DNA of 64,000 nt from Oikopleura dioica. Its lineage: Eukaryota > Animalia > Chordata. Location of the stretch: assembly GCA_907165135.1 (NCBI GenBank), contig OU015567.1, forward strand, positions 14,384,001-14,448,000. The letters are read 5' to 3'. Below, one piece after another: positions 18,379 to 28,081 of the stretch. The translations under genes and the position numbers were made by a program. Every line of letters begins with the position of its first letter. The first letter of the stretch is position 1. The notes under the pieces are model-generated. The model did not search any database and was not told the DNA's origin. It worked only from the letters and a program-made list of their open reading frames with translations.

Positions 18379-18820
18379 TTTATACAAAAAAATTTCCCAC
18401 TTCCAAAAGCACTAAAAGGTCTAAGTAGGTATGCATACCTTTGAAACGCTGCAACAGCCCCTTTTCTCTACTTTTTCGCCGCCGCCAAAGTAAAAAAGAT
18501 TTTTGGTAATGCCCGATGGTAATTATTAACGAAGCATAAATAGTACACAAAACAACTCACATAACAAACAATTTTGTTCCATATCGCTTCCTACACTACT
18601 GCAATTTGCGCTCATTGTTTTTTTCCCTAGACCGTCATTTTTGCCATGAACCGCATTATTTCAGACCCTGACTCAGGGTTTATACACAGGTTCCAGAGCT
18701 CATCTCTTTGAATTTTACAATTTGTGAATTGGTATAATTGCTACTAGAATAATACAGTGAGAAACTTGCGAACTATTGAGCAGTGACGTTATTAATAAAT
18801 TTAACTTGCTAGAAAAACGG

Positions 18821-20023
18821 TTATTTTTCCAGAATACTATTCGGCACATCGGACGCCCGGACTTCTTTCCCGTTGACGAAGAGCGTCTTGCCGTTCCACT
18901 TGATCGTTTTGTTCTCTTTCTGCGCCTAATTAACTGTTAGAAGACAAGTTAATGAAATATTATCGCCCGGAACGAAGCGATAATTAGACTGCGCAGAAGA
19001 ATCGAGTTAGAATCGAGTCCTTACCAGTTTTGCGTAAGCTTCTAGTTTCGCATTATCGTGGATTTGCTTGAGCGTGAGATCTTCTCTGATCTCGAACTGG
19101 GCAGGAAGCACTTTTCGTTTGTAGAAAATTCTTGTTTTGTCTTTCCAGCGCTGGAATTTGACGAGAATGGGTTTCGGATTCGATTTTCCGTCATCGTGCC
19201 GCTAGAATTTCTTTGAGAATCGAGGTTTCTTATGACTGGACTCGGCAGTCTGAGTCAGGTTCTGAAGAGGCTATTATAAAAGCCGCGTAGCGTTCTTCAG
19301 AGCCTGACTCAGGTTTTCTTCGAGCCTATTTTATGAGAGAAAGCTTCTTTACCTCGCAGTATTCGATGTCTTTGTCTTTCAAGTCGATTTCCATTTTTGA
19401 AACAAGAAGCTGGCGAACTAATTTTTCAGGATCTTCTTCTGGTCCTTCTTCTGCGAGGCCGAAAAACAGCAAGTTGTATTTCTAAAATTGGCGACGATAA
19501 AGAAGGGATGAGTGGAAAAAAAAACAATTAGCAGACGACGCAAGGCCGACTTACCTTTGTGTATTGCTCGAGGACGTCAATCTGATTATCGTGACTTGAG
19601 ATAGAGAGTCCCGTCTTGTTAGTGTCGAGCGAAAGCTGAAGTTGCTCGTCTAAGAGTCGCTGCTGCGATTCCTGCATCGCCTCAACGCTTTTGATAATGG
19701 AGTCTACTTGTCGATCGATCGCGTTTTGCCGTTCTAGGTTACAAGTTCAAAATTCTAACTTTTACTTCAAGGGTTATTTTATCGACAATTTTCAAGCGGT
19801 TCATTTTTTCGAAGGAATAATTGAGTCTGACCGAAGCTCGTTCAGAATAGCTTATGTAGTCAACAAATTGAAAAGAACCAGACTTGAAAGAGAAAAAAGC
19901 CGCGTTCTTAGAATTCACAGGGGGCACTGTATTACCTGAAAGATAAAGGACCATGGCGACAAAGAGAACTGCCAGAAACAAAAGCGGCCTGACGAGGGTG
20001 GCGACTGAGACCTGCCGAAACAT
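18821..20023 (-). CDS. 5-exon, 225-aa protein: signal peptide/anchor + coiled coil + LINE ORF1p-like RRM/CTD module
   Basis: Exons 20023-19936, 19733-19555, 19481-19353, 19201-19025, 18925-18821; all four introns GT-AG and phase-consistent. Motifs LEQYTKKYNLLFFGLAEE, PKPILVKFQRWKDK, FEIREDLT, IKWNGKTLFVNG. Confidence 0.75.
19240..19326. mobile_element. Short TGACTCA-family MITE in intron 3 of the ORF1p-like gene
   Basis: ctcggcagtctgagtcaggttctgaag ... cttcagagcctgactcaggttttcttcgagcc. Confidence 0.65.
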
Positions 20024-20421
20024 CTCTTACGACGTTTTCTTTTCTTGCTTTTCGTGAACTATCTCTGCATCGATAAGGCAAAAGCTAATTACTGACTAAA
20101 ATGCGGCTGAAATGAGGATTTCGGAGATGTGGTCGGCGACCATGTTTGCCAGAAACTCGCGAACTTGCCCGAGGGAGGATCGCACGGGCCAACGATTTAC
20201 GAGTTCTTGAACCTTTCATGCAACGTAGGGGTCAATTCTGCCGTCCATTTATGGGCGGAACGAGTTTTAACAGGGGCCGTGATTTATGAGATTCGAAACA
20301 AAGAAAATGGAGAATCGCTGACGAGAAAAATAGCGTTTTTTCTGGCCATTTAAAAAGTAGATGTGAGAGTTTATTGTCAATTCGTGTGAGGAAAAAATGC
20401 CATCGCTCGAAGAAGGGTAAG

Positions 20422-21601
20422 TTAGGGGCAGCTTTTGTCGACCATGTCGTAAAGGACTCCTTCCAAAGACAGTTGAGAAACATCAATGGGAGCATCACTG
20501 GCGGGCACTTGTCCTCGATCTTGGGCCAAAAGATCATCTTGGGTACTGGAGAAAAGTGGAGGAGAAAGTGGAGGGGTAGCGTCGTCGTCGGTTTCCTGAA
20601 ACTCGACGGTGCTTTCATCACTGGTCTCATTTCCAAGCCTGGAATCCCAGTCATTCCAGTAGTTCCAGCTCACTTGACTGAGAGATTGAGAAGCTGGAGG
20701 AGTCTGCGCTGCTTGCGGTTCTTTTTCTTCTTCATCTTCATCGGATAACAATTCATCGTCGTCGTCCAATTCAGCTGGAATCGCCAACGAAGGAATTTCT
20801 AACTCTCGTAGACGCTTCTTCTCGTTATCAGTTGTCGATTCTGATTCGGAGAGCATTTTTATGTGCTCTTGCCAGATCTCCTGAAAAAGTAAGTTTCAAA
20901 ATCGTAACAAGAATCAAGAGGCGTTACCTTGAATTTGTCATCTTTCGCAAGAAGTTCTTCCTTGCTCTCGTCAAAGTCCCTGATTGGCATCCAGAGAAGA
21001 TCTCTTATGTCTCTTAGATCGTCGTCGTCCCCTTCGTGCTCAGAAAGACATTTCTGATGGAGGAAAAAGAGGTCTTTGTGAGTGTAAGGAAGCTCTTCAA
21101 TCTCCAGATTCCAGGGAATGACGATCCCTTCTTTCAACATCTCCATCGCGCGGTCCATGATGTCTTCTTCGTACTTGATCAATCGCTTTACTATCGCAAA
21201 GAGCTCCACCATTTGACTGCCCCAGATACCTTGGCCCGGGTTCGTAATGACTCCATGCTGAGCCATAGCTCTCTGGAGAATGTCTCTGTGGGCACATGCG
21301 ATGCCTTCCTCAGACTCTTCATATTCATCTCCGCTAAGCCTTGCTTCCTCTTCGTCGTCTTCTTCGTCTTCCTCGATTCCTTCGTCTTCTTCGTCTTCCT
21401 CGACTTCTGAAATGACTATTTCTGCCTCGTTGCTATTGTTAGTTTCAGGGCCGAAAAGCTGAAGAAATGTCAAAAAATAGTTTGGAGAAGTTTTACTCTT
21501 ACATGATCAAGAATAAACTTGTCCACTTCGAAGCGCACTTGTGAGTCTATATCAACGATCGGCAGCGATCGATGCAGCGCAGCAAAGTCGAAAGAAGTCA
21601 T
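20422..21601 (-). CDS. Uncharacterised highly acidic protein, multi-exon
   Basis: Long D/E-rich ORFs 20859-21473 and 20422-20856 plus a short first exon MTSFDFAALHRSLP..; GT-AG junctions; no family recognised. Confidence 0.6.
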
Positions 21602-21956: not shown

Positions 21957-24900
21957 CTAGTTGTCAGCCATTTTGACAAGGATAGGGACGATCTGCTCGA
22001 AGGTGGGTCGCTTGGAAGGCTCGTCTTTCATGCAGATTCTGATGACTTCCGCCATATTTGGAGTTATGCCGTTTGGAATGCGCACGCGCTAGAAATCGAT
22101 CAGAAATTTGGAAAATCGACCGCCGTCTTACCAAGTTTTCATGGGCAACTTGGATACCAATTTGCATTGATGAAAGATCTGCGAAAGGAATCTCGTGAGT
22201 GACCATTTCCCAAAGAACGATGGAGAAGCTCCACATGTCCGCTTTCTGAAATGACAGTATGAAAGCCGCAACCGCGCTCTGATCCGTACCTTTCTATTGT
22301 AATCATTTCCTTTGGGTGAGATAGGAGCGAGAGCTTCGGGAGCCATCCAAGCGGGATCGTAGATCTATTCAAGATTTTTAACTCTCGGAAGAATGACAAT
22401 TTGTCACCTTATCATTTCCCTGGATTGAAAAGTCGGAGCTTGCCAGATCAAGCCTAGCGTTTTGCTCACCATCGATAACGACATGCTTCGAGTTCAGCCG
22501 AAATCTTGGAGAGGATCCTGGCTAAAAGACGAAAAATTGTTGACCCTGAAAGTGAGAAGGAAAATACCTGCATGTCATGCAAGAACTTCATCCCTCGCGC
22601 AATATCAACGGCAAACTTTTTAATCGCATTGTTGTCCACCACCGGGATTCCCTTTCCTCCGTGCAAGACCGAGTTCAGCGATCCAACAGGCATCCATTGT
22701 GAAACAATCGCAAGCGTTGGAGGGTTCTAAAAGTCTTAATTGAAACCGGAAATCGGCTCTAAGCGAGCTTGAAATCTGGTCAATCTGTCTTCCGGCCTAG
22801 CGCGCGCCGGGGGCCGAGTCTCTGGACAGACTTTGCCTGGCGGGGCGCGCCAGTCTCGATTTTACGCTCGTTGTCGCTCTTGATCAAAATTGCTCCATAT
22901 TTAAAGATCCCGAAGTCTTCCAGAAAATCAGAAAAATAAAAATAATGTTTATCTTCAAACTTTTCAAAGCCTCGCTCGAAAGGCTCTTCAAAGAAGAAGT
23001 CGAAATCGGCCTAGAGCACTTGATCCTCTTCGCTGCCAAGTGCGGCATATGCCTGACGCTTCAAGATGTCATGATAGGATCGGTCAAAATAGAAGACCTA
23101 GTGCACTCGCTGAAGGAAATCAAGGCGCTAGAAGACCCCGTGATCATTCGAGCGCTGACGGAAACCATGTGTTTCATCCCTCCAGCTGGCCTCGCCCCTC
23201 AGCAGCGCAAAAATCTATCGACTTTGCTGAATCAAGAAATTCAACGCGAAATGTCTGATCTCTTGAACACCTCTGACTACTGTTCCGATCTCGAGGAGAC
23301 TTATTAATAATTTTTCCCTGTAAATACAAGAGTACCTGAATTTTGCTGACGATTCCAAGGGCAGGAAGGAGATTTTGATGGGAGAAAATTCGTGTTTTCG
23401 CGTATTCTTCTTGGAATTCGCGAAGATGCCTCGAAGAAAGAGCCAAAGGTTTCTGAGGCAAATAAGGGATGAATCCTCAAATTGAAGAGATAGTCTTACA
23501 TTATCATTGTCAGAGTCGACAGTAAGCGATCTCGGTAAAATGAGGATCTTTACTAAAACGTCGGAATCGTTCCATTTGCCTTTGAGAATGCTGTAGGACT
23601 TTGTGTCTTCCAGGCGAGCTTTGATGTTGAGTGCTTTCATGTCCAGATCGTTGTGTTTGTCCTGTAGTCGAAAAGTATGAGGTCTGAAAGAAGGAATTGA
23701 AGCAGTTAAAAAGGGAGGAGAGCTTACTTTGCCGTTCCAAGCCATGTTTTCGACTGATACGGGATTCTGTCGACACTCTCGTCGAGAGGCTTAGATTGAG
23801 ATGCAAAATGAGATCATCTGATTGGTCAAAAGAAAGTTAGATCGCAGAGAGAAATAATGTTCAAAGGGGGATTGAATTTACGACGATTTACGAATCACTT
23901 CAAAGTTCTTGAGCTGCCGGTAGAATTCAGAATCGATCAAAGCCAGTTGACGAAAAATCTTCATCGATTGCAAAGAGCGGCGCATCCCGACTTAGGAAAG
24001 CCAGCTTATAAATTTCTCGAATGAAGAGTTTTTAGGGGGTTCAGTTGATGAATCGGCGAGAATCAACTCGGCAGCTGGGATAATTCGATCCGCTCATCTC
24101 AGAGGCCTTCATCTTTTGGAATTACGAGGCGTGACGTTTGATGAAAATGCTTCCCAACCACCTAATGATTATGGTTCAATTTTTACGAAAAAACAGTTAG
24201 TTAGTTCGATCTTGGGTCAATTTTATCAAAAAACAAATCTCGTAGTTCATTTCCTGCTGTGAGGTGCCCCTAAGTGGCGCCCTCTTTTGGAAGATGGATC
24301 ACAGATTATAATGGACAATACCAAGTTCACGATAAATGAAAAGTTATAAGTTGTAAAATGAAAGCAAAATTGTTTGCATATATTCGTCGCCTTGTCTATT
24401 AAACCAGATAAAGAATTTCTCTTTAACATGATGGAAATCAACGAGGACCTCGACGACTGCTCTTCAATCGACCAAGTGAATGTTATCAAATCAGAAAATG
24501 AAGCGGCCGTTGAAGACCTCGTAGAAAAAATATCATCTTCTTTCGACAATGAAGACTTTGAACGCGCTCTAGAACTGCTGCAGCACATGAAGTACCGCGA
24601 GCGACTTGCAAAGCGCGTCGAGAAAAAAATCGAAAGTTTCTAATAAATTCGAAAATACAACTCATTCCTGATCCATTTGCTGTGCTCTAGCTTTCAACTC
24701 GGTCGCAAGAGCACGTCTGGCTTTTTCTAGCGGCGTTTGTCCGTATTTATTCTCCAGAAGGAGCTTTGCACCATTTTCAAACAGCAGGATTGCAAGTTCC
24801 CTAGACAAATGTTCGGTTTCATGGATTTTCATTTATAGAATAAACATGGTAACATTTACAGAATTCTACCGATAGTTGCCAAAGCAAGCGTAGTGCAGGG

Positions 24901-25288
24901 GGCTATTTCCGTGCTCATTTCGCTCATTTAGCAGGGACAGCGTCGTTTTGTGCCTCATAAGGGTCTTGGCAATTTCCAGATGACCACATTGGCAGGCATT
25001 GTGAAGAGGAGTATCGTCTCCTCGGTTCTTGGCAGAGACACGGGCTCCCCGGTCAAGCAGCAGTTCTACAACTTGTTTGTGGCCGTATCTAGCCGCCCAG
25101 TGTAGGGGAGTGAACCAGTGATCATCGACCTGTAAGAGAACAGTAACGACTGCATTGAAGATTTGTGATGTTACCTGGTTCACATCGTTTTCAGTATTAT
25201 CTAGCCAGAGTTTTATGCTCATGACACTGTCGCCCTTCTTCGAAAGGTGGAAAATGTCTGCTGGTTGTTGTGCTTCCATCATCGCCAT
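21957..25288 (-). CDS. ILK: Integrin-linked kinase (ankyrin repeats + pseudokinase)
   Basis: [96 protein letters not shown]. Confidence 0.95.
22945..23307 (+). CDS. Orphan ORF nested antisense in an ILK intron (5' end unresolved)
   Basis: 120-aa open frame with protein-like composition inside the ILK intron ~22730-23335; possible upstream exon [13 protein letters not shown].. at ~22775-22930 via a GA-AG intron. Confidence 0.45.
   Translation: MFIFKLFKASLERLFKEEVEIGLEHLILFAAKCGICLTLQDVMIGSVKIEDLVHSLKEIKALEDPVIIRALTETMCFIPPAGLAPQQRKNLSTLLNQEIQREMSDLLNTSDYCSDLEETY
23857..24643 (+). CDS. HSCB: Mitochondrial Fe-S co-chaperone HscB/HSC20, nested antisense in an ILK intron
   Basis: [23 protein letters not shown] (J-domain HPD); [10 protein letters not shown]; [13 protein letters not shown]; [21 protein letters not shown]. 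Confidence 0.88.
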
Positions 25289-25581
25289 TTTGACTATTTC
25301 TACTCTAGGATCAAAAATCAGTTGCATTTTGCTGTTGTTAAACGTTTTCTTATCAGTAAGTGTAATTTCTGGAAGACAGAATGAATCATGCAGCTAAAAC
25401 TGTAAGGCGTAATGGTGAGTAGGTGGTGGTAAGGTCACTTTGAATAGAGAAAAACGAGCACTAGAATTGCAGAAGGCCACGATTGAACTAAATGTTTCTA
25501 AGAGTACGTTCATTCGATGTTCATTTTGAAGATCAAATATTGAAATCTCGTAGACTACTTTAAGGAGAGCACAGAAGGTGT

Positions 25582-28081
25582 CTAATAATAATAATCGATG
25601 AGTTTCTGACGTTCGGATCTCATCAAATCGTATTTATCATTGTTGGTCAGCTTGTAGACGCGAAATGTCTTGTTCTCAAGCACCAGCTGGAAATATTTTG
25701 CATAAGAGGGATTTACTTGAACTTCGTTGCAAAATCTTTCTGGCAGACCCGCCTTTGGAGTCGTTCGGTCAGCCTTAAAAATATTGTCTAGGCTTTCTCA
25801 ATTCAAAGCGATTGAAACCTGAAGATGATCATTTGCTAGGTCAATCAGATCTGGCGTCGCGCAGTTATCCTTTTTCGAACCGCCTTGATAGCAAATCGAG
25901 TTTTCCACCACAATATGCGTCGTTCCATATTTTCCTAGCCGCTCGAGCACTTCTTCCGCCGTTCTATGAGCGTAAATCTGGTATACATCGAAAGTAGTTT
26001 CTCTCAACCGCTTGTCTTCGTAATGAGGATGATTTGTGAGCGCTCTCCAGGTGCTAAATGACAAATTAAACAACTGGTCTACATTCCAGGTTAGGGTTAG
26101 GTTACCTGAGCCGGACGCCAGCATTGAGCTGCATAGATCCCGAAAAGACTGTATCTCTCGGCTGCTGGGCTCCCCATTCCATGAGCTCTACTGTGTCGGG
26201 ATCGTAAAATTCGAGCTCTTTAGTCGTTTGCTTCGTGTAGTCTTCAATGTTGTTGTAATAGGCTCCGAATAAAAGAGCAGCAGTGATGAAAAATCTTCCA
26301 TCTCTCCATTTTAATATTCCCCAAATTTCCGGAAGCGACACTTTTCAAGGTAAAAAGCTTCAAAAACTTTACGCGAATTTCACTTTTCAACCTTGCCTAA
26401 ACAAATCAAAGCGGCCGCATGCGGCGACCACAAGTACTTCATTCTCATCGTCGACAAAGCAAGAAGGAAAAAGATAAAGGAGTGGATGAGATGATAGCCG
26501 ATTTCGGGGCGATCTGAAAATGGTCCTCTTCCAGGCTTGCCATTTTCGTCCATTGACCAGACTTGAAATTGGTGGTATAAAAGAGCTAATAATCCAACGA
26601 CAAGGACTGCGATCCAAGCTGGTAGGAATCCCTGCGTTGCTAGCCGCGGGAAAGTGTCTTTTGGCAGGAAATTGAACGCGCCATTGCATAGATAGAGCTA
26701 TTTCGAGGTCATAATGGACATTTTTAGACAGTGGGGGCTGTTATAAGTTGTCTTCTAACCTTTCCTTTGCGTCGAAATCATCCGTTTCGGCGATTTCAAA
26801 CTTTGCGAGGAGAAATTTGAAAATATGCTCGTCAGGCTCAACAGCTATTGCCGATTTGACTCCCATTTGGAAAACGGTAGCGAGAGCGATTGTGAGAATG
26901 ATTTCGATAATGAGCTTCAGGAAGGAAATAATTGCGCCGTCTTTAGATCTGCGTAGACGACAAGAAAGCATAATCCAAGCTGCAGGAATGAAGGAAGCAA
27001 CAAGTGATCTATAAAAGAATGATAAGCTGGAATAAAATTCTGTGGGTAAACCTTGGAGTCATGGTATTGAAGAACTGGAGAATGTAAGTCATCACCAGCG
27101 AAAATATCAGAGACAGATAGACAACTTTCACTTTCTTCGTTGGCACCAGATCGAGAGCACCAGCGCCATAAAGCGCGCAAGCTTGGAGAAGAAAGACGAA
27201 CTGATTGAATTGCCAGCAAATCGCGAAGCAAAAAGAAGCTGGAAAGTTTTCATTTCTATCTTTCAAATCAAAACGAAAACTTACCGAAACAAAGCCCTAC
27301 TGTATATTTGACATCGTGCTGAGTACCCTGTTTGAAATATTTTGTCAGTATTGCCAGTTGAAGAGCCCAAAAAGGAAGAGCGAAGGACTCTCTCAGCGGA
27401 ACGGTGAACTCGACTCTCGTCATGTCGAATCGAGCCAGAGTGAAGAAGACTGGAGCGGGAAGAGCGCATACCCATGATCCACAAAGCATCCAAGCTGTGA
27501 AGTACAGCGACAAACTGTAGATAAGTTGGAGATTGAACACTAAAATTCCATCAAAATAAAGAAGATGGAGGAAAGAAACCTTGGTATGTGTACCAAATGA
27601 TCGGGATGAGCTTTGGTTTGAGAATTTTGTAGACGACGCCTAAGAAAAACTCCTGGTAGATGTTGAATCGCTCGAGGATATTGACTTCATTAGGGAATTC
27701 GGTTTTGTTATCGCGGGTGTATCGATGCATGGCAGTTGAAAAATCGGGAGCTTCAACGTATTGCTTGAAGTAAGAATAATAGAGTCCAGATTCTGTTCTT
27801 TCATGAAGTTCGAGAAATACTCGCCGCGTAAGTAAGAACCTTCGAAACGAACCTTTCCTGAAAGAAATTTCTCTTTCGACCTGCTTGATGTTCGTGAACC
27901 ACATTTCATTTTCATGCTGAATGTACAGATACCATGTATGATGATAAGCAATGGCCAAACCAATGAGAACTCCAATCACATTCCAAACCAAAGAAAGAAA
28001 ATTAACTTCCGCTCGTTTTCCAGTATCCACTTTCTTTGCTTCTTTCTCTTTCGATTTCCTATCCGATGCCTTTTTGGCCAT
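25582..28081 (-). CDS. DPY19L3: DPY19-family C-mannosyltransferase, DPY19L3-like
   Basis: HENEMWFTNIKQVEREISFRTESGLYYSYFK; TRVEFTVPLRE; DTVELMEW..SMQLNAGVRL; LTNHPHYED; NKTFRVYKL. Confidence 0.9.

What the first reader, a model, noticed from the sequence alone, without database searches (positions are those of the whole stretch)
18821..20023. Intron-containing LINE ORF1p-like gene fused to an N-terminal signal/membrane anchor: candidate retrotransposon domestication
Seen: five exons splice by four canonical, phase-consistent GT-AG introns into an intact 225-aa ORF that the ORF track misses. Architecture: MFRQVSVATLVRPLLFLAVLFVAMVLYLS (hydrophobic), a heptad-like stretch, then LEQYTK-KYNLLFFGLAEE, DIEYCERH..PKPILVKFQRWKDK, FEIREDLT and KWNGKTLFVNG. 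Established: these match the recurring motifs of L1/L2/CR1-type ORF1p (coiled coil, RRNNL..G.PE, RP.IVKF, I.EDL; Transposase_22-like RRM+CTD). Active LINEs are intronless and carry ORF2 downstream; no RT or endonuclease is seen here. Inference: a host gene built from an RNA-chaperone ORF1p and routed to the secretory pathway or a membrane, unlike the cytosolic domesticate L1TD1.
Basis: partly seen in the sequence, partly recalled or inferred. Interest (0 to 1): 0.8.

Follow-up and report, generated by a model that had tools for sequence, protein, structure and literature searches.

The report
Membrane-anchored LINE ORF1p-like tunicate gene
This is a real, expressed, strongly conserved five-exon gene of the tunicate Oikopleura dioica. 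Its 225-residue protein joins a membrane anchor to the complete fold of a LINE retrotransposon's ORF1 protein, and sea squirts have it too, so it looks like an old and apparently unreported capture of a transposon protein by the host.

Summary
Five minus-strand exons (20023-18821) join through four GT-AG introns into an intact 225-codon frame.

The exon peptides tile without gaps on the public but uncharacterised O. dioica protein P0015 (8 differences in 225). An intron-less environmental contig, L015, joins all five exons at the predicted borders. RNA-seq loose ends show introns 3 and 4 spliced.

Against the Norwegian ortholog, 100 of 112 nucleotide differences are at third codon positions (dN/dS about 0.01). 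The intron positions and the upstream kinase neighbour are the same.

The ORF1p reading is supported:
- An AlphaFold model (pLDDT 83) has human LINE-1 ORF1p as its top ten PDB matches (E 8e-7; VIA Z 10.9, against 7.6 for the best generic RRM).
- The family profile finds ORF1p first among PDB sequences (E 2.6e-4).
- No Pfam model is reached, however.

The gene has one diverged paralog and no adjacent reverse transcriptase. It is colinear, anchor included, with uncharacterised proteins of Ciona and Styela.

The protein is predicted to form a coiled-coil trimer and, by the charge rule, to be a type II membrane protein. Topology and ligand remain untested.

The scan had already found ORF1p-like stalks in O. 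dioica olfactomedin genes elsewhere in this genome. This gene is the stand-alone member, and it keeps the C-terminal domain.

The parts
20024..20070 (-). 5' untranslated region (minimum extent)
   Evidence: The spliced-form contig L015 aligns upstream of the ATG to window 20070. RNA reads lie at 20040-20213.
19936..20023 (-). Exon 1 (coding): ATG and N-terminal hydrophobic anchor (residues 1-29 plus the first base of codon 30)
   Evidence: Peptide MFRQVSVATLVRPLLFLAVLFVAMVLYLS. The anchor is conserved in P0015, Ciona P0013, Styela P0012 and L005.
19940..19996 (-). Predicted transmembrane / signal-anchor helix (residues 10-28)
   Evidence: The Kyte-Doolittle 19-residue maximum is 2.2-2.6 in O. 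dioica, Ciona and Styela. The N flank is positive and the C flank neutral or negative. The segment is helical in the AF2 model.
19734..19935 (-). Intron 1 (202 nt, GT..AG, phase 1)
   Evidence: It is absent from L015 and at the same position in the Norwegian ortholog L013. In another Oikopleura lineage the intron lies 26 nt further on.
19555..19733 (-). Exon 2: coiled-coil stalk (residues 30-89)
   Evidence: In the predicted trimer the heptad contacts run from residue 31 to 88. RNA reads of run X3 lie here.
19482..19554 (-). Intron 2 (73 nt, GT..AG, phase 0)
   Evidence: It is absent from L015. The same position is used in L013 and L017.
19353..19481 (-). Exon 3: first half of the ORF1p-type RRM (strand 1, helix 1; KYNLLFFGLAEE...DIEYCE)
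   Evidence: It aligns to 'KRPNLRLIGVPES' of human ORF1p in the profile hit.
19202..19352 (-). Intron 3 (151 nt, GT..AG, phase 0)
   Evidence: The RNA-seq loose end at 19353 continues into the end of exon 4. The Norwegian ortholog's intron is only 40 nt.
19250..19312 (.). Short palindromic dispersed repeat inside intron 3 (19-nt arms, 25-nt spacer)
   Evidence: inverted repeat I1. About 20 further dispersed places in the genome match at 76-91%.
19025..19201 (-). Exon 4: second half of the RRM (PKPILVKF, RWKDK..., FEIREDLT) and first helix of the C-terminal domain
   Evidence: It is unique in the genome. phmmer with this exon alone finds Ciona (E 3e-6) and Styela (E 5.5e-4) among 1.84 billion proteins.
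18926..19024 (-). Intron 4 (99 nt, GT..AG, phase 0)
   Evidence: The RNA-seq loose end at 18926 continues into exon 4 at 19025. It is absent from L015.
18821..18925 (-). Exon 5 (coding): strands of the C-terminal domain (KWNGKTLFVNGKEV) and TAA stop
   Evidence: RNA reads lie here.
18713..18820 (-). 3' untranslated region (minimum extent)
   Evidence: The L015 alignment runs on to window 18713.

Best explanation
The locus is a host gene of tunicates. In this genome it has only one diverged paralog. It descends from the ORF1 of an ancient LINE retrotransposon and has gained an N-terminal membrane anchor.

The 225-residue protein has four parts:
- a short, positively charged N-terminus;
- one hydrophobic helix (residues 10-28);
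- a stalk of about 60 residues (31-88) that forms a parallel three-stranded coiled coil;
- a head made of the non-canonical RRM (90-173) and C-terminal domain (176-215) of LINE-1 ORF1p.

Shown here: the exon structure, splicing, expression in a sister lineage, strong purifying selection, conservation of the whole build in Ciona and Styela, and absence of an adjoining reverse transcriptase.

Shown at the level of models and profiles: the fold is that of ORF1p, and it self-associates as a trimer.

Inferred:
- The capture happened before appendicularians and ascidians split.
- The hydrophobic helix is an uncleaved signal anchor that puts the N-terminus in the cytosol and the trimeric stalk and heads in the lumen or outside the cell (type II). 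Distantly related ORF1p-like modules form the stalk of olfactomedin proteins in the same genome, which fits this.
- The mostly basic, cysteine-free heads bind a polyanion such as single-stranded nucleic acid, as ORF1p does.
For: Gene model and splicing; RNA-seq junctions for introns 3 and 4.

Selection and synteny: against the Norwegian ortholog there are 112 nucleotide differences, 100 of them at codon position 3, and 8 conservative residue changes. dN is 0.023 and dS 1.85 (saturated). The four intron positions and the upstream kinase are the same.

ORF1p fold: the AF2 model of P0015 has pLDDT 83 and the order strand-helix-strand-strand-helix-strand, then a helix and three strands.
- By Foldseek, the ten best PDB matches are all human LINE-1 ORF1p (2ykp_A E 8.3e-7, TM 0.58/0.63, 179 columns), with generic RRMs only from E 6e-3.
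- By VIA-align over 48,161 chains: 2yko_A Z 10.9 (175 residues, model 45-225), 2w7a_B Z 9.7, 2ldy Z 9.3, next best 7.6.

Sequence: the family profile against PDB sequences puts LINE-1 ORF1p first (E 2.6e-4, 23.7 bits) and aligns the signature motifs.

ESM Atlas: neighbours by features and by structure include clusters carrying PF02994, PF17489 and PF17490.

Trimer: ipSAE 0.78 against a best control of 0.01, runs agreeing in at least 97% of contacts, partner pLDDT at least 86, heptad contacts 31-88 (the mark was reached by 21 of 30 proteins solved as pairs and 0 of 23 solved as single chains).

Host gene, not repeat.

Tunicate-wide: Ciona P0013 is 39% identical over 212 residues with 2 gaps, anchor included. 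Styela P0012 belongs too. The Ciona gene has introns, and one sits at the same place and phase as in an Oikopleura lineage.

Anchor.

Olfactomedin relatives.
Against: No member reaches any Pfam ORF1p model (PF02994, PF17489, PF17490) or PF25298, even at E 10. Sequence identity to human ORF1p is only 13-16%. Homology therefore rests on one profile hit of modest E-value plus predicted structure.

The trimer pass may be 'from memory' of the solved ORF1p trimer, and the calibration used two copies, not three.

No source LINE with a closer ORF1 was found, so the direction of descent is an inference.

Topology is unsupported by any experiment or dedicated predictor. The head has 0-1 cysteines and is basic in O. 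dioica, Ciona and Styela, which would also suit a cytosolic RNA-binding head. In some other appendicularian sequences the head is neutral or acidic (pI 5.8-6.8), which weakens a general polyanion-binding claim.

The one sequon conserved in all full-length members (N68-x-T) lies in the coiled coil beside its core positions and may be structural rather than a glycosylation site.
Confidence: 0.78

Rival explanations
1. The gene and fold are the same, but the head faces the cytosol. The N-terminal helix tethers a trimeric ORF1p-like RNA-binding protein to the cytosolic face of the ER or another organelle. There it holds or chaperones RNA, or interferes with retrotransposon particles.
For: The head is basic (pI 9-10 in O. 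dioica, Ciona and Styela) and has 0-1 cysteines, as expected for a cytosolic nucleic-acid binder. ORF1p and its known domesticate L1TD1 act in the cytoplasm (PMC11925450, PMC11014241).
Against: In every full-length member the positive charges lie before the hydrophobic helix, and the following 15 residues are mostly neutral or negative (net +1 at most in L005). This predicts N-terminus inside and C-terminus outside. Distantly related ORF1p-like modules sit in the stalk of olfactomedin proteins, whose olfactomedin domain is extracellular in known families.
Confidence: 0.2
2. The hydrophobic N-terminus is a cleaved signal peptide, so the product is a secreted soluble trimer, not a membrane protein.
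For: The hydrophobic segment begins within 10 residues of the N-terminus and follows one or two basic residues, as in signal peptides.
Against: The uninterrupted hydrophobic run is 16-19 residues, longer than a usual signal-peptide core. No small-x-small cleavage motif follows it (…VLYLS ERQ). The AF2 model runs one helix from residue 7 to 89. No signal-peptide predictor was available, so this is weakly tested.
Confidence: 0.15
3. The likeness to ORF1p is convergent or reflects a very old shared fold. On this view the gene is an ordinary coiled-coil and RRM protein family that was never part of a retrotransposon, or ORF1p came from such a host gene.
For: No Pfam ORF1p model is reached. No source LINE was found. 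The ESM Atlas shows the same build in many clusters without any family name and fused to other domains.
Against: Three modules occur in the same order as in ORF1p (trimeric coiled coil, non-canonical RRM, CTD). ORF1p is the best match both for the whole model and for the RRM alone among 48,161 chains. The profile hit aligns the signature motifs in register. The host family was found only in tunicates and marine plankton sequences, whereas by established knowledge ORF1p of this type is spread through LINEs of many animal phyla.
Confidence: 0.07
4. The reading frame is the ORF1 of an unrecognised mobile element, not a host gene.
For: None was found beyond the fold itself.
Against: The exon peptides are unique in the genome. 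Four spliceosomal introns are shared with the Norwegian ortholog at a syntenic place. dN/dS is about 0.01 at saturated dS. No reverse transcriptase is among the 150 best hits in the window. The neighbours are ankyrin, kinase and Dpy19 genes.
Confidence: 0.01

Closest known systems
LINE-1 ORF1p (human; PDB 2ykp, 2yko, 2ykq, 2w7a, 2ldy; Pfam Tnp_22_trimer PF17489, Transposase_22 PF02994, Tnp_22_dsRBD PF17490)
   Same: The order of modules is the same: parallel trimeric coiled coil, non-canonical RRM, C-terminal domain. It is the best structural match for the whole model and for the RRM alone. The profile hit has the motifs in register. A trimer is predicted.
   Different: Identity is 13-16% and no Pfam model is reached. 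The gene has four introns and only one diverged paralog, with no ORF2. An N-terminal hydrophobic anchor replaces ORF1p's disordered N-terminal region. The stalk is shorter, about 60 residues. RNA binding is untested.
L1TD1 (eutherian domesticated L1 ORF1p; PMC4161310, PMC11925450, PMC11014241)
   Same: It is a host gene whose coding sequence derives from LINE ORF1, and it is kept by selection at a syntenic locus.
   Different: [quoted passage not shown] The tunicate gene has a membrane anchor, is conserved between appendicularians and ascidians, is under very strong purifying selection, and is unrelated by descent to L1TD1.
ORF1p-derived alternative exons in vertebrate genes (Lyosin/MYL4, L1-RFX5, NUP42-L1, USP4-L1; PMC12129022)
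   Same: Coiled coil and RRM (and in one case CTD) of ORF1p are reused in a host protein. For Lyosin and L1-RFX5 no repeat is detectable at the site any more.
   Different: Those are fusion isoforms of pre-existing genes, restricted to vertebrate clades. Here the whole protein apart from the anchor is ORF1p-like, and the lineage is Tunicata.
Tunicate olfactomedin genes with an ORF1p-like stalk
   Same: They are in the same genome and have the same beginning: membrane anchor, coiled coil, ORF1p-type RRM with the GIPE and VKF-type motifs. hhalign of the family profile against them gives E 1.3e-5 and 2.9e-6.
   Different: They continue into an olfactomedin domain and lack the ORF1p C-terminal domain. 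Identity is only 23-35% over 40-75 columns, so they are distant relatives or a separate capture. The window gene has no olfactomedin domain.
Baculovirus FP25K (few-polyhedra protein; Pfam PF03258 / PF25298)
   Same: Predicted FP25K structures match the model (E 3.6e-4 to 3e-3). ESM Atlas neighbours often carry PF25298. This suggests the same coiled-coil and RRM build reused outside LINEs.
   Different: No Pfam hit to PF25298 or PF03258. The structural scores are weaker than for ORF1p. FP25K has no N-terminal anchor in these matches. No paper in the library links the two.

Membership tests
LINE ORF1p, L1 type (Pfam PF17489 + PF02994 + PF17490) | Match to the Pfam models above their gathering scores | tested here: not met
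   No hit even at E 10 for the exon peptides, seven relatives or all 14 members of A3. PF02994 and PF17490 scans of the whole genome do not touch the locus.
LINE ORF1p, L1 type | Significant sequence similarity to a bona fide ORF1p by a profile method | tested here: met
   The profile of A3 against 177,635 PDB sequences puts LINE-1 ORF1p first (2ykp/2yko, E 2.6e-4, 23.7 bits, profile 44-157 to chain 6-128). 2w7a scores E 0.26. The match is modest, and part of the score is coiled coil.
LINE ORF1p, L1 type | Non-canonical RRM followed by the ORF1p C-terminal domain | tested here: met
   On a predicted model (pLDDT 83): Foldseek top ten are all ORF1p. VIA gives 2yko_A Z 10.9 over model 45-225, 2w7a_B Z 9.7 and 2ldy Z 9.3, against 7.6 for the best other RRM.
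LINE ORF1p, L1 type | Homotrimer through an N-terminal parallel coiled coil | tested here: met
   Prediction only: three copies of P0015 30-225 give ipSAE 0.78 against a best control of 0.01, with heptad contacts 31-88. The pass may come from memory of 2ykp.
LINE ORF1p, L1 type | Encoded without introns upstream of an endonuclease/reverse-transcriptase ORF2, in many copies | tested here: not met
   The gene has four introns, its exon peptides are unique in the genome, and no reverse transcriptase among the 150 best matches lies in the window. This failure is what makes it a host gene rather than an element.
LINE ORF1p, L1 type | Binds single-stranded nucleic acid and acts as a chaperone | not testable with these tools
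   Only indirect evidence: head pI is 9-10 in three lineages but 5.8-6.8 in others.
Domesticated transposon gene (host gene of transposon origin) | Orthologs at a syntenic place in diverged lineages, under purifying selection, expressed | tested here: met
   In the Norwegian ortholog L013 the upstream kinase and the four intron positions are the same, and dN/dS is 0.012. Reads from oligo-dT and single-cell RNA-seq runs, plus a spliced environmental contig, show expression. Colinear homologs exist in Ciona and Styela.
Domesticated transposon gene | Nests within transposon-borne relatives in a tree (direction of descent) | not tested
   No set of LINE ORF1 sequences could be obtained. The searches returned only host-type relatives.
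Type II (signal-anchor) membrane protein | One N-terminal hydrophobic helix of transmembrane length, more positive flank on the N side, no cleavage | tested here: inconclusive
   The Kyte-Doolittle maximum is 1.5-2.6. N-flank charge is 0 to +3 and C-flank -2 to 0 in the ten members scored. No SignalP or TMHMM-type tool was available, and there is no experiment.
Tunicate olfactomedin with ORF1p-like stalk | Olfactomedin domain after the RRM | tested here: not met
   The protein ends after the CTD, 34 residues into exon 5. No olfactomedin hit appears in Pfam scans of 14 members.
Baculovirus FP25K family (PF03258 / PF25298) | Match to the Pfam models | tested here: not met
   No hit. Only fold similarity at E 3.6e-4 and weaker.

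The most novel reading that the evidence does not exclude
A complete LINE ORF1p (trimeric coiled coil, RRM, CTD) was captured at the base of the tunicates, given a signal anchor, and has since been kept as an outward-facing or lumenal trimer. This would be the first ORF1p domesticate outside vertebrates and the first outside the cytosol. It may also be the progenitor of the ORF1p-like stalk of tunicate olfactomedins. Its heads might bind extracellular or lumenal nucleic acid or another polyanion.
Probability: 0.35. Interest if true: 0.8.

Novelty: new variant of a known kind. Interest (0 to 1): 0.62.

Why it matters
Very few host genes are known to derive from LINE ORF1. L1TD1 was long called the only one (PMC4161310, PMC11014241), and a 2025 study added four vertebrate fusion isoforms (PMC12129022). 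All of these are vertebrate.

A tunicate-wide, intron-bearing, strongly constrained gene that keeps all three ORF1p modules behind a membrane anchor would do three things:
- It would push ORF1p domestication back to the tunicate stem.
- It would place this fold on a membrane, probably outside the cytosol.
- It would give, in Ciona and Oikopleura, experimentally tractable systems to ask what an ORF1p head does when it is not packaging LINE RNA.

It also shows that standard domain annotation misses such genes: no Pfam domain is recorded for any of the 30 family proteins listed, apart from an unrelated domain in the extended tail of one (P0017). Together with the olfactomedin cases found elsewhere in this genome, it suggests repeated or diversified reuse of one transposon module in tunicate membrane and secreted proteins.

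Tried and rejected
- Pfam on the five exon peptides, on seven relatives and on all 14 members of A3 gave no ORF1p, FP25K or other credible family.
- phmmer of exons 3 and 4 against PDB sequences gave only chance hits, namely designer PPR repeats and an aminopeptidase.
- PF02994 and PF17490 scans of the whole genome found nothing at this locus or credibly elsewhere.
- The word search with Ciona P0011 returned only the two Ciona isoforms. The profile word search (A1) returned only family members, and the short 83-aa hits are exon-1 fragments of Oikopleura lineages.
- The look-up of encoding contigs had no record for Styela P0012.
- I first dismissed the weak genome hit L012 (E 0.059) as coiled-coil chance. 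After the earlier scan notes I re-read it and found an ORF1p-type RRM exon before an olfactomedin domain, so that dismissal was wrong.
- Mobile-element reading: rejected.
- N68-x-T as proof of a lumenal stalk: not accepted, because the flanking T67, T70 and G71 are coiled-coil core contacts in the predicted trimer.
- Paper searches for the accession numbers, for ORF1p together with tunicate names, and for FP25K together with ORF1p found nothing relevant.
Exons were searched one by one by reference, and the public protein P0015 (8 differences in 225) stood in for the joined product. The joined coding sequence was built only inside scripts, to check the frame and count substitutions.
Full report
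**1. The observation**

The gene lies on the minus strand. Reading the reverse complement gives these parts:
- Exon 1, 20023-19936: ATG ... TCAG, then GTAATA.
- Intron 1, 202 nt, ending CCTAG.
- Exon 2, 19733-19555.
- Intron 2, 73 nt.
- Exon 3, 19481-19353.
- Intron 3, 151 nt.
- Exon 4, 19201-19025.
- Intron 4, 99 nt.
- Exon 5, 18925-18821, ending in TAA.

A script confirmed 678 coding bases, 225 codons and one terminal stop. All four introns run GT..AG, in phases 1, 0, 0, 0. The exons were searched one by one by reference, and the joined coding sequence was built only inside scripts, to check the frame and count substitutions.

**2. Is the model real?**

Four independent lines say yes.

First, homology. 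phmmer with the 59-residue exon 4 peptide against 1.84 billion representatives found 12 proteins, all of one family. A profile word search then found the full-length members. The five exon peptides tile end to end, with no gap or overlap at any junction, on continuous proteins. These include NCBI's 'unnamed protein product [Oikopleura dioica]' (P0015, 225 aa), a continuous 217-codon frame on the environmental contig L005, Ciona intestinalis LOC100181609 (P0013) and Styela clava LOC120332920 (P0012). The gene is therefore already annotated, though only as uncharacterised.

Second, a spliced nucleic-acid form. The 903-nt environmental contig L015 carries an uninterrupted 678-nt frame. It aligns to the window in five blocks that abut in the contig: 38-169, 168-348, 347-477, 476-655, 650-839. 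These fall on window 20070-19936, 19735-19555, 19483-19353, 19203-19024 and 18931-18713, at 75-84% identity. This is the mRNA form of an ortholog from a sister lineage. It joins all four junctions, including exon 1 to the 19733 exon, and it sets minimum UTR extents.

Third, RNA-seq. Raw reads of four runs labelled with the same species (three oligo-dT bulk runs, one single-cell run) matched at only 90-95%, so they come from a diverged lineage. Within the gene they lay only on exons; a few further reads lay just outside it, on stretches consistent with its UTRs. Loose ends at 18926 and 19353 continue into the two ends of exon 4, with 25/28 and 23/29 matches. The contiguous intron gives only 4-5 matches. 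Introns 1 and 2 had too few reads for a direct call.

Fourth, selection. All 11 differences listed by read laying are at codon position 3.

The Norwegian reference genome was also compared (L013, FN653840.1). Its ortholog has the same four intron positions, all GT..AG. There are 112 nucleotide differences, 100 of them at position 3, and only 8 conservative residue changes. dN is 0.023 and dS 1.85 (saturated), giving dN/dS 0.012. Introns align at only 62-95% of the shorter member and differ in length. A protein kinase lies upstream in both genomes.

**3. Is it ORF1p-like?**

Pfam says nothing. No exon peptide, relative or member of the cleaned alignment A3 reaches PF02994, PF17489, PF17490 or PF25298, even at E 10.

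(a) Profile against PDB sequences. The A3 profile searched against all PDB sequences puts human LINE-1 ORF1p first (2ykp/2yko, E 2.6e-4). The family's 'YtkkyNLkfyGleEe' aligns with 'YVKRPNLRLIGVPES', and 'nPrpirVkF' with 'TPRHIIVRF'.

(b) Predicted structure. AlphaFold2 on A3 (first row P0015) gave pLDDT 83. The model has one helix from residue 7 to 89, then strand-helix-strand-strand-helix-strand (92-172), then a helix (176-194) and three strands.
- By Foldseek, the ten best PDB matches are all chains of the human ORF1p trimer or its RRM-CTD fragment. The best is E 8.3e-7, TM 0.58/0.63, 179 columns. Generic RRMs start at E 6e-3.
- An independent all-against-representatives alignment gave 2yko_A Z 10.9 (175 residues, model 45-225), the isolated ORF1p RRM 2w7a_B Z 9.7 and 2ldy Z 9.3. 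The best unrelated RRM scored 7.6.

(c) ESM Atlas. Neighbours by language-model features (exon 4 alone, and P0015) and by structure include clusters carrying PF02994, PF17489 and PF17490. Many others carry PF25298. Predicted baculovirus FP25K structures also match, more weakly.

I conclude that the coiled-coil, RRM and CTD build of ORF1p is present. This is homology at the level of a distant relative, not Pfam membership.

**4. Host gene or element?**

Exon 3 and exon 4 peptides are unique in the 64.3-Mb, 19-contig genome. The family profile finds the five exons themselves and one diverged paralog on contig 2 (L008, E 3.9e-18). That paralog has the same anchor, coiled coil and 'RNVHVTGIPE...DIVVKF' RRM. 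The profile also gave one weak hit on contig 1.

None of the 150 best reverse-transcriptase matches lies in the window. The neighbours are an acidic protein without a family, an ankyrin-plus-kinase gene and Dpy19.

In Ciona the gene has three exons and sits between a homeodomain gene and another small gene. P0015 and Ciona P0013 are 39% identical over 212 residues with two gaps, from the anchor to the last strand.

Ciona's first intron is phase 0, after ...LTEQ. It sits at the same aligned position and phase as the first intron of another Oikopleura lineage, shown by comparing genomic L017 with the spliced form L016. That argues for an intron-bearing gene in the common ancestor.

**5. The N-terminus and the likely mechanism**

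Every full-length member starts with one or more basic residues. A hydrophobic run of 16-19 residues follows (Kyte-Doolittle maxima 1.5-2.6), and then a flank that is mostly neutral or acidic. By the positive-inside rule this is a signal anchor with the N-terminus in the cytosol. No cleavage-type motif follows. No dedicated predictor was available, so this remains an inference.

Three copies of residues 30-225 of P0015 were predicted to form a parallel trimer. The score was 0.78 against a best control of 0.01. Runs agreed in at least 97% of contacts, and partner pLDDT was at least 86. The mark was reached by 21 of 30 proteins solved as pairs and 0 of 23 solved as single chains, and the calibration used two copies. 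Contacts fall every 3-4 residues from 31 to 88. The pass may reflect memory of the solved ORF1p trimer.

The head has 0-1 cysteines. Its pI is 9-10 in O. dioica, Ciona and Styela, but 5.8-6.8 in some other plankton sequences. An N-x-T at stalk residue 68 is kept in all full-length members, but its neighbours T67, T70 and G71 are core contacts, so it may be structural.

My best reading is a membrane-anchored trimer presenting three ORF1p heads, probably on the lumenal or outer side, that bind a polyanion. The cytosol-facing and secreted versions are the live rivals.

**6. What the earlier scan notes added**

A word search of the scan's notes showed that other windows of this genome hold olfactomedin genes. 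Their stalk, between the membrane anchor and the olfactomedin domain, is an ORF1p-like coiled coil plus RRM. I checked two.
- On L018, a minus-strand exon reads 'RKNVRIRGLPE ... RPAVVTFAQYAMKNKVLEKA ... VLFEDL' and runs on into olfactomedin sequence. hhalign against A3 gives probability 81% and E 1.3e-5.
- The weak contig 1 hit L012, which I had dismissed as chance, has 'KVFGIPEAVNETD...KDVEAVDRVGG' before an olfactomedin exon. hhalign gives E 2.9e-6.

These are distant relatives that lack the CTD. The window gene is the stand-alone member that keeps the whole ORF1p build. Because olfactomedin domains are extracellular in known families (established knowledge), this raises the odds that the anchor puts ORF1p-like modules outside the cytosol. 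Whether there was one capture or several is open.

**7. Comparison with what is known, and novelty**

Known ORF1p domesticates are L1TD1 of eutherians (PMC4161310, PMC11925450, PMC11014241) and four vertebrate fusion isoforms: Lyosin/MYL4, L1-RFX5, NUP42-L1 and USP4-L1 (PMC12129022). None is outside vertebrates.

No paper in the library holds the accession numbers of the tunicate proteins. None of the papers listed combines ORF1p with Oikopleura, Ciona or tunicates. The library does not hold all journals, so this absence is not proof.

I class the finding as a new variant of a known kind. The gene model itself is public and the fold is known. The recognition of ORF1p descent, the membrane anchor, the age and the lineage appear to be new.

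**8. Limits**

- The structure is a prediction from a 14-row alignment.
- The direction of descent and the restriction to tunicates rest on searches that see only close or word-sharing relatives, plus one 59-residue phmmer query.
- Topology, oligomer state and ligand are untested.
- Direct RNA evidence in the Okinawan lineage itself was not obtained. All RNA support comes from sister lineages.

Noticed in passing
window 19250-19312 (inside intron 3); half-copy at 18660-18681: A short palindrome (19-nt arms, 25-nt spacer) accounts for most of the extra length of intron 3, which is 151 nt here against 40 nt in the Norwegian ortholog. It is a dispersed repeat with about 20 further places on several contigs at 76-91% identity, i.e. 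a MITE-like insertion specific to this lineage.
   Followed up: partly
window 19734-19935 (intron 1), compared with L017:929-1026 and L014:6097-6487: The first intron is not at the same place in all lineages. The Okinawan and Norwegian O. dioica have it in phase 1 after codon 29. Another Oikopleura lineage has none there but has one in phase 0 after codon 38, 26 nt further on. That is exactly where Ciona has its first intron. This looks like loss of an old intron and gain of a new one nearby, rather than simple sliding.
   Followed up: partly
L008 (G000:C2:1164313-1167804), minus strand, about 1309-2019: A diverged paralog with the same anchor, coiled coil and RRM start (RNVHVTGIPERRDENPE ... 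DIVVKF). Its third exon reads ...SPYMVKDAL and then stops. The next frame continues with a stretch resembling the family's last helix and strands. It may therefore be truncated or frameshifted, or have a further small intron.
   Followed up: partly
L012 (G000:C1:2729490-2732708) and L018 (G000:C5:9624000-9633999): Olfactomedin genes whose stalk holds an ORF1p-type RRM after a membrane anchor and coiled coil, as earlier notes of this scan reported. They are distant relatives of the window gene and lack its C-terminal domain.
   Followed up: partly
window 20422-21473, minus strand: Directly upstream on the same strand lie two long open frames (144 and 204 aa), very rich in Asp and Glu, with no Pfam family. 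The frames end about 400 nt before the ATG of the ORF1p-like gene, and RNA reads lie at 20040-20213. An operon or a shared transcript was not tested.
   Followed up: no
window 21964-25327 and 25798-26124, minus strand: Ankyrin repeats plus a kinase fragment (an integrin-linked-kinase-like build), then a Dpy19 fragment. These are ordinary host genes, and the kinase neighbour is conserved in the Norwegian assembly.
   Followed up: no
model m8a7a4a570187 against BFVD and the ESM Atlas: Baculovirus FP25K and many invertebrate proteins carrying PF25298 share the coiled-coil plus RRM build of ORF1p. Atlas clusters also show it fused to NADAR, Impact_N and PHD domains. No paper in the library links FP25K to ORF1p.
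   Followed up: no
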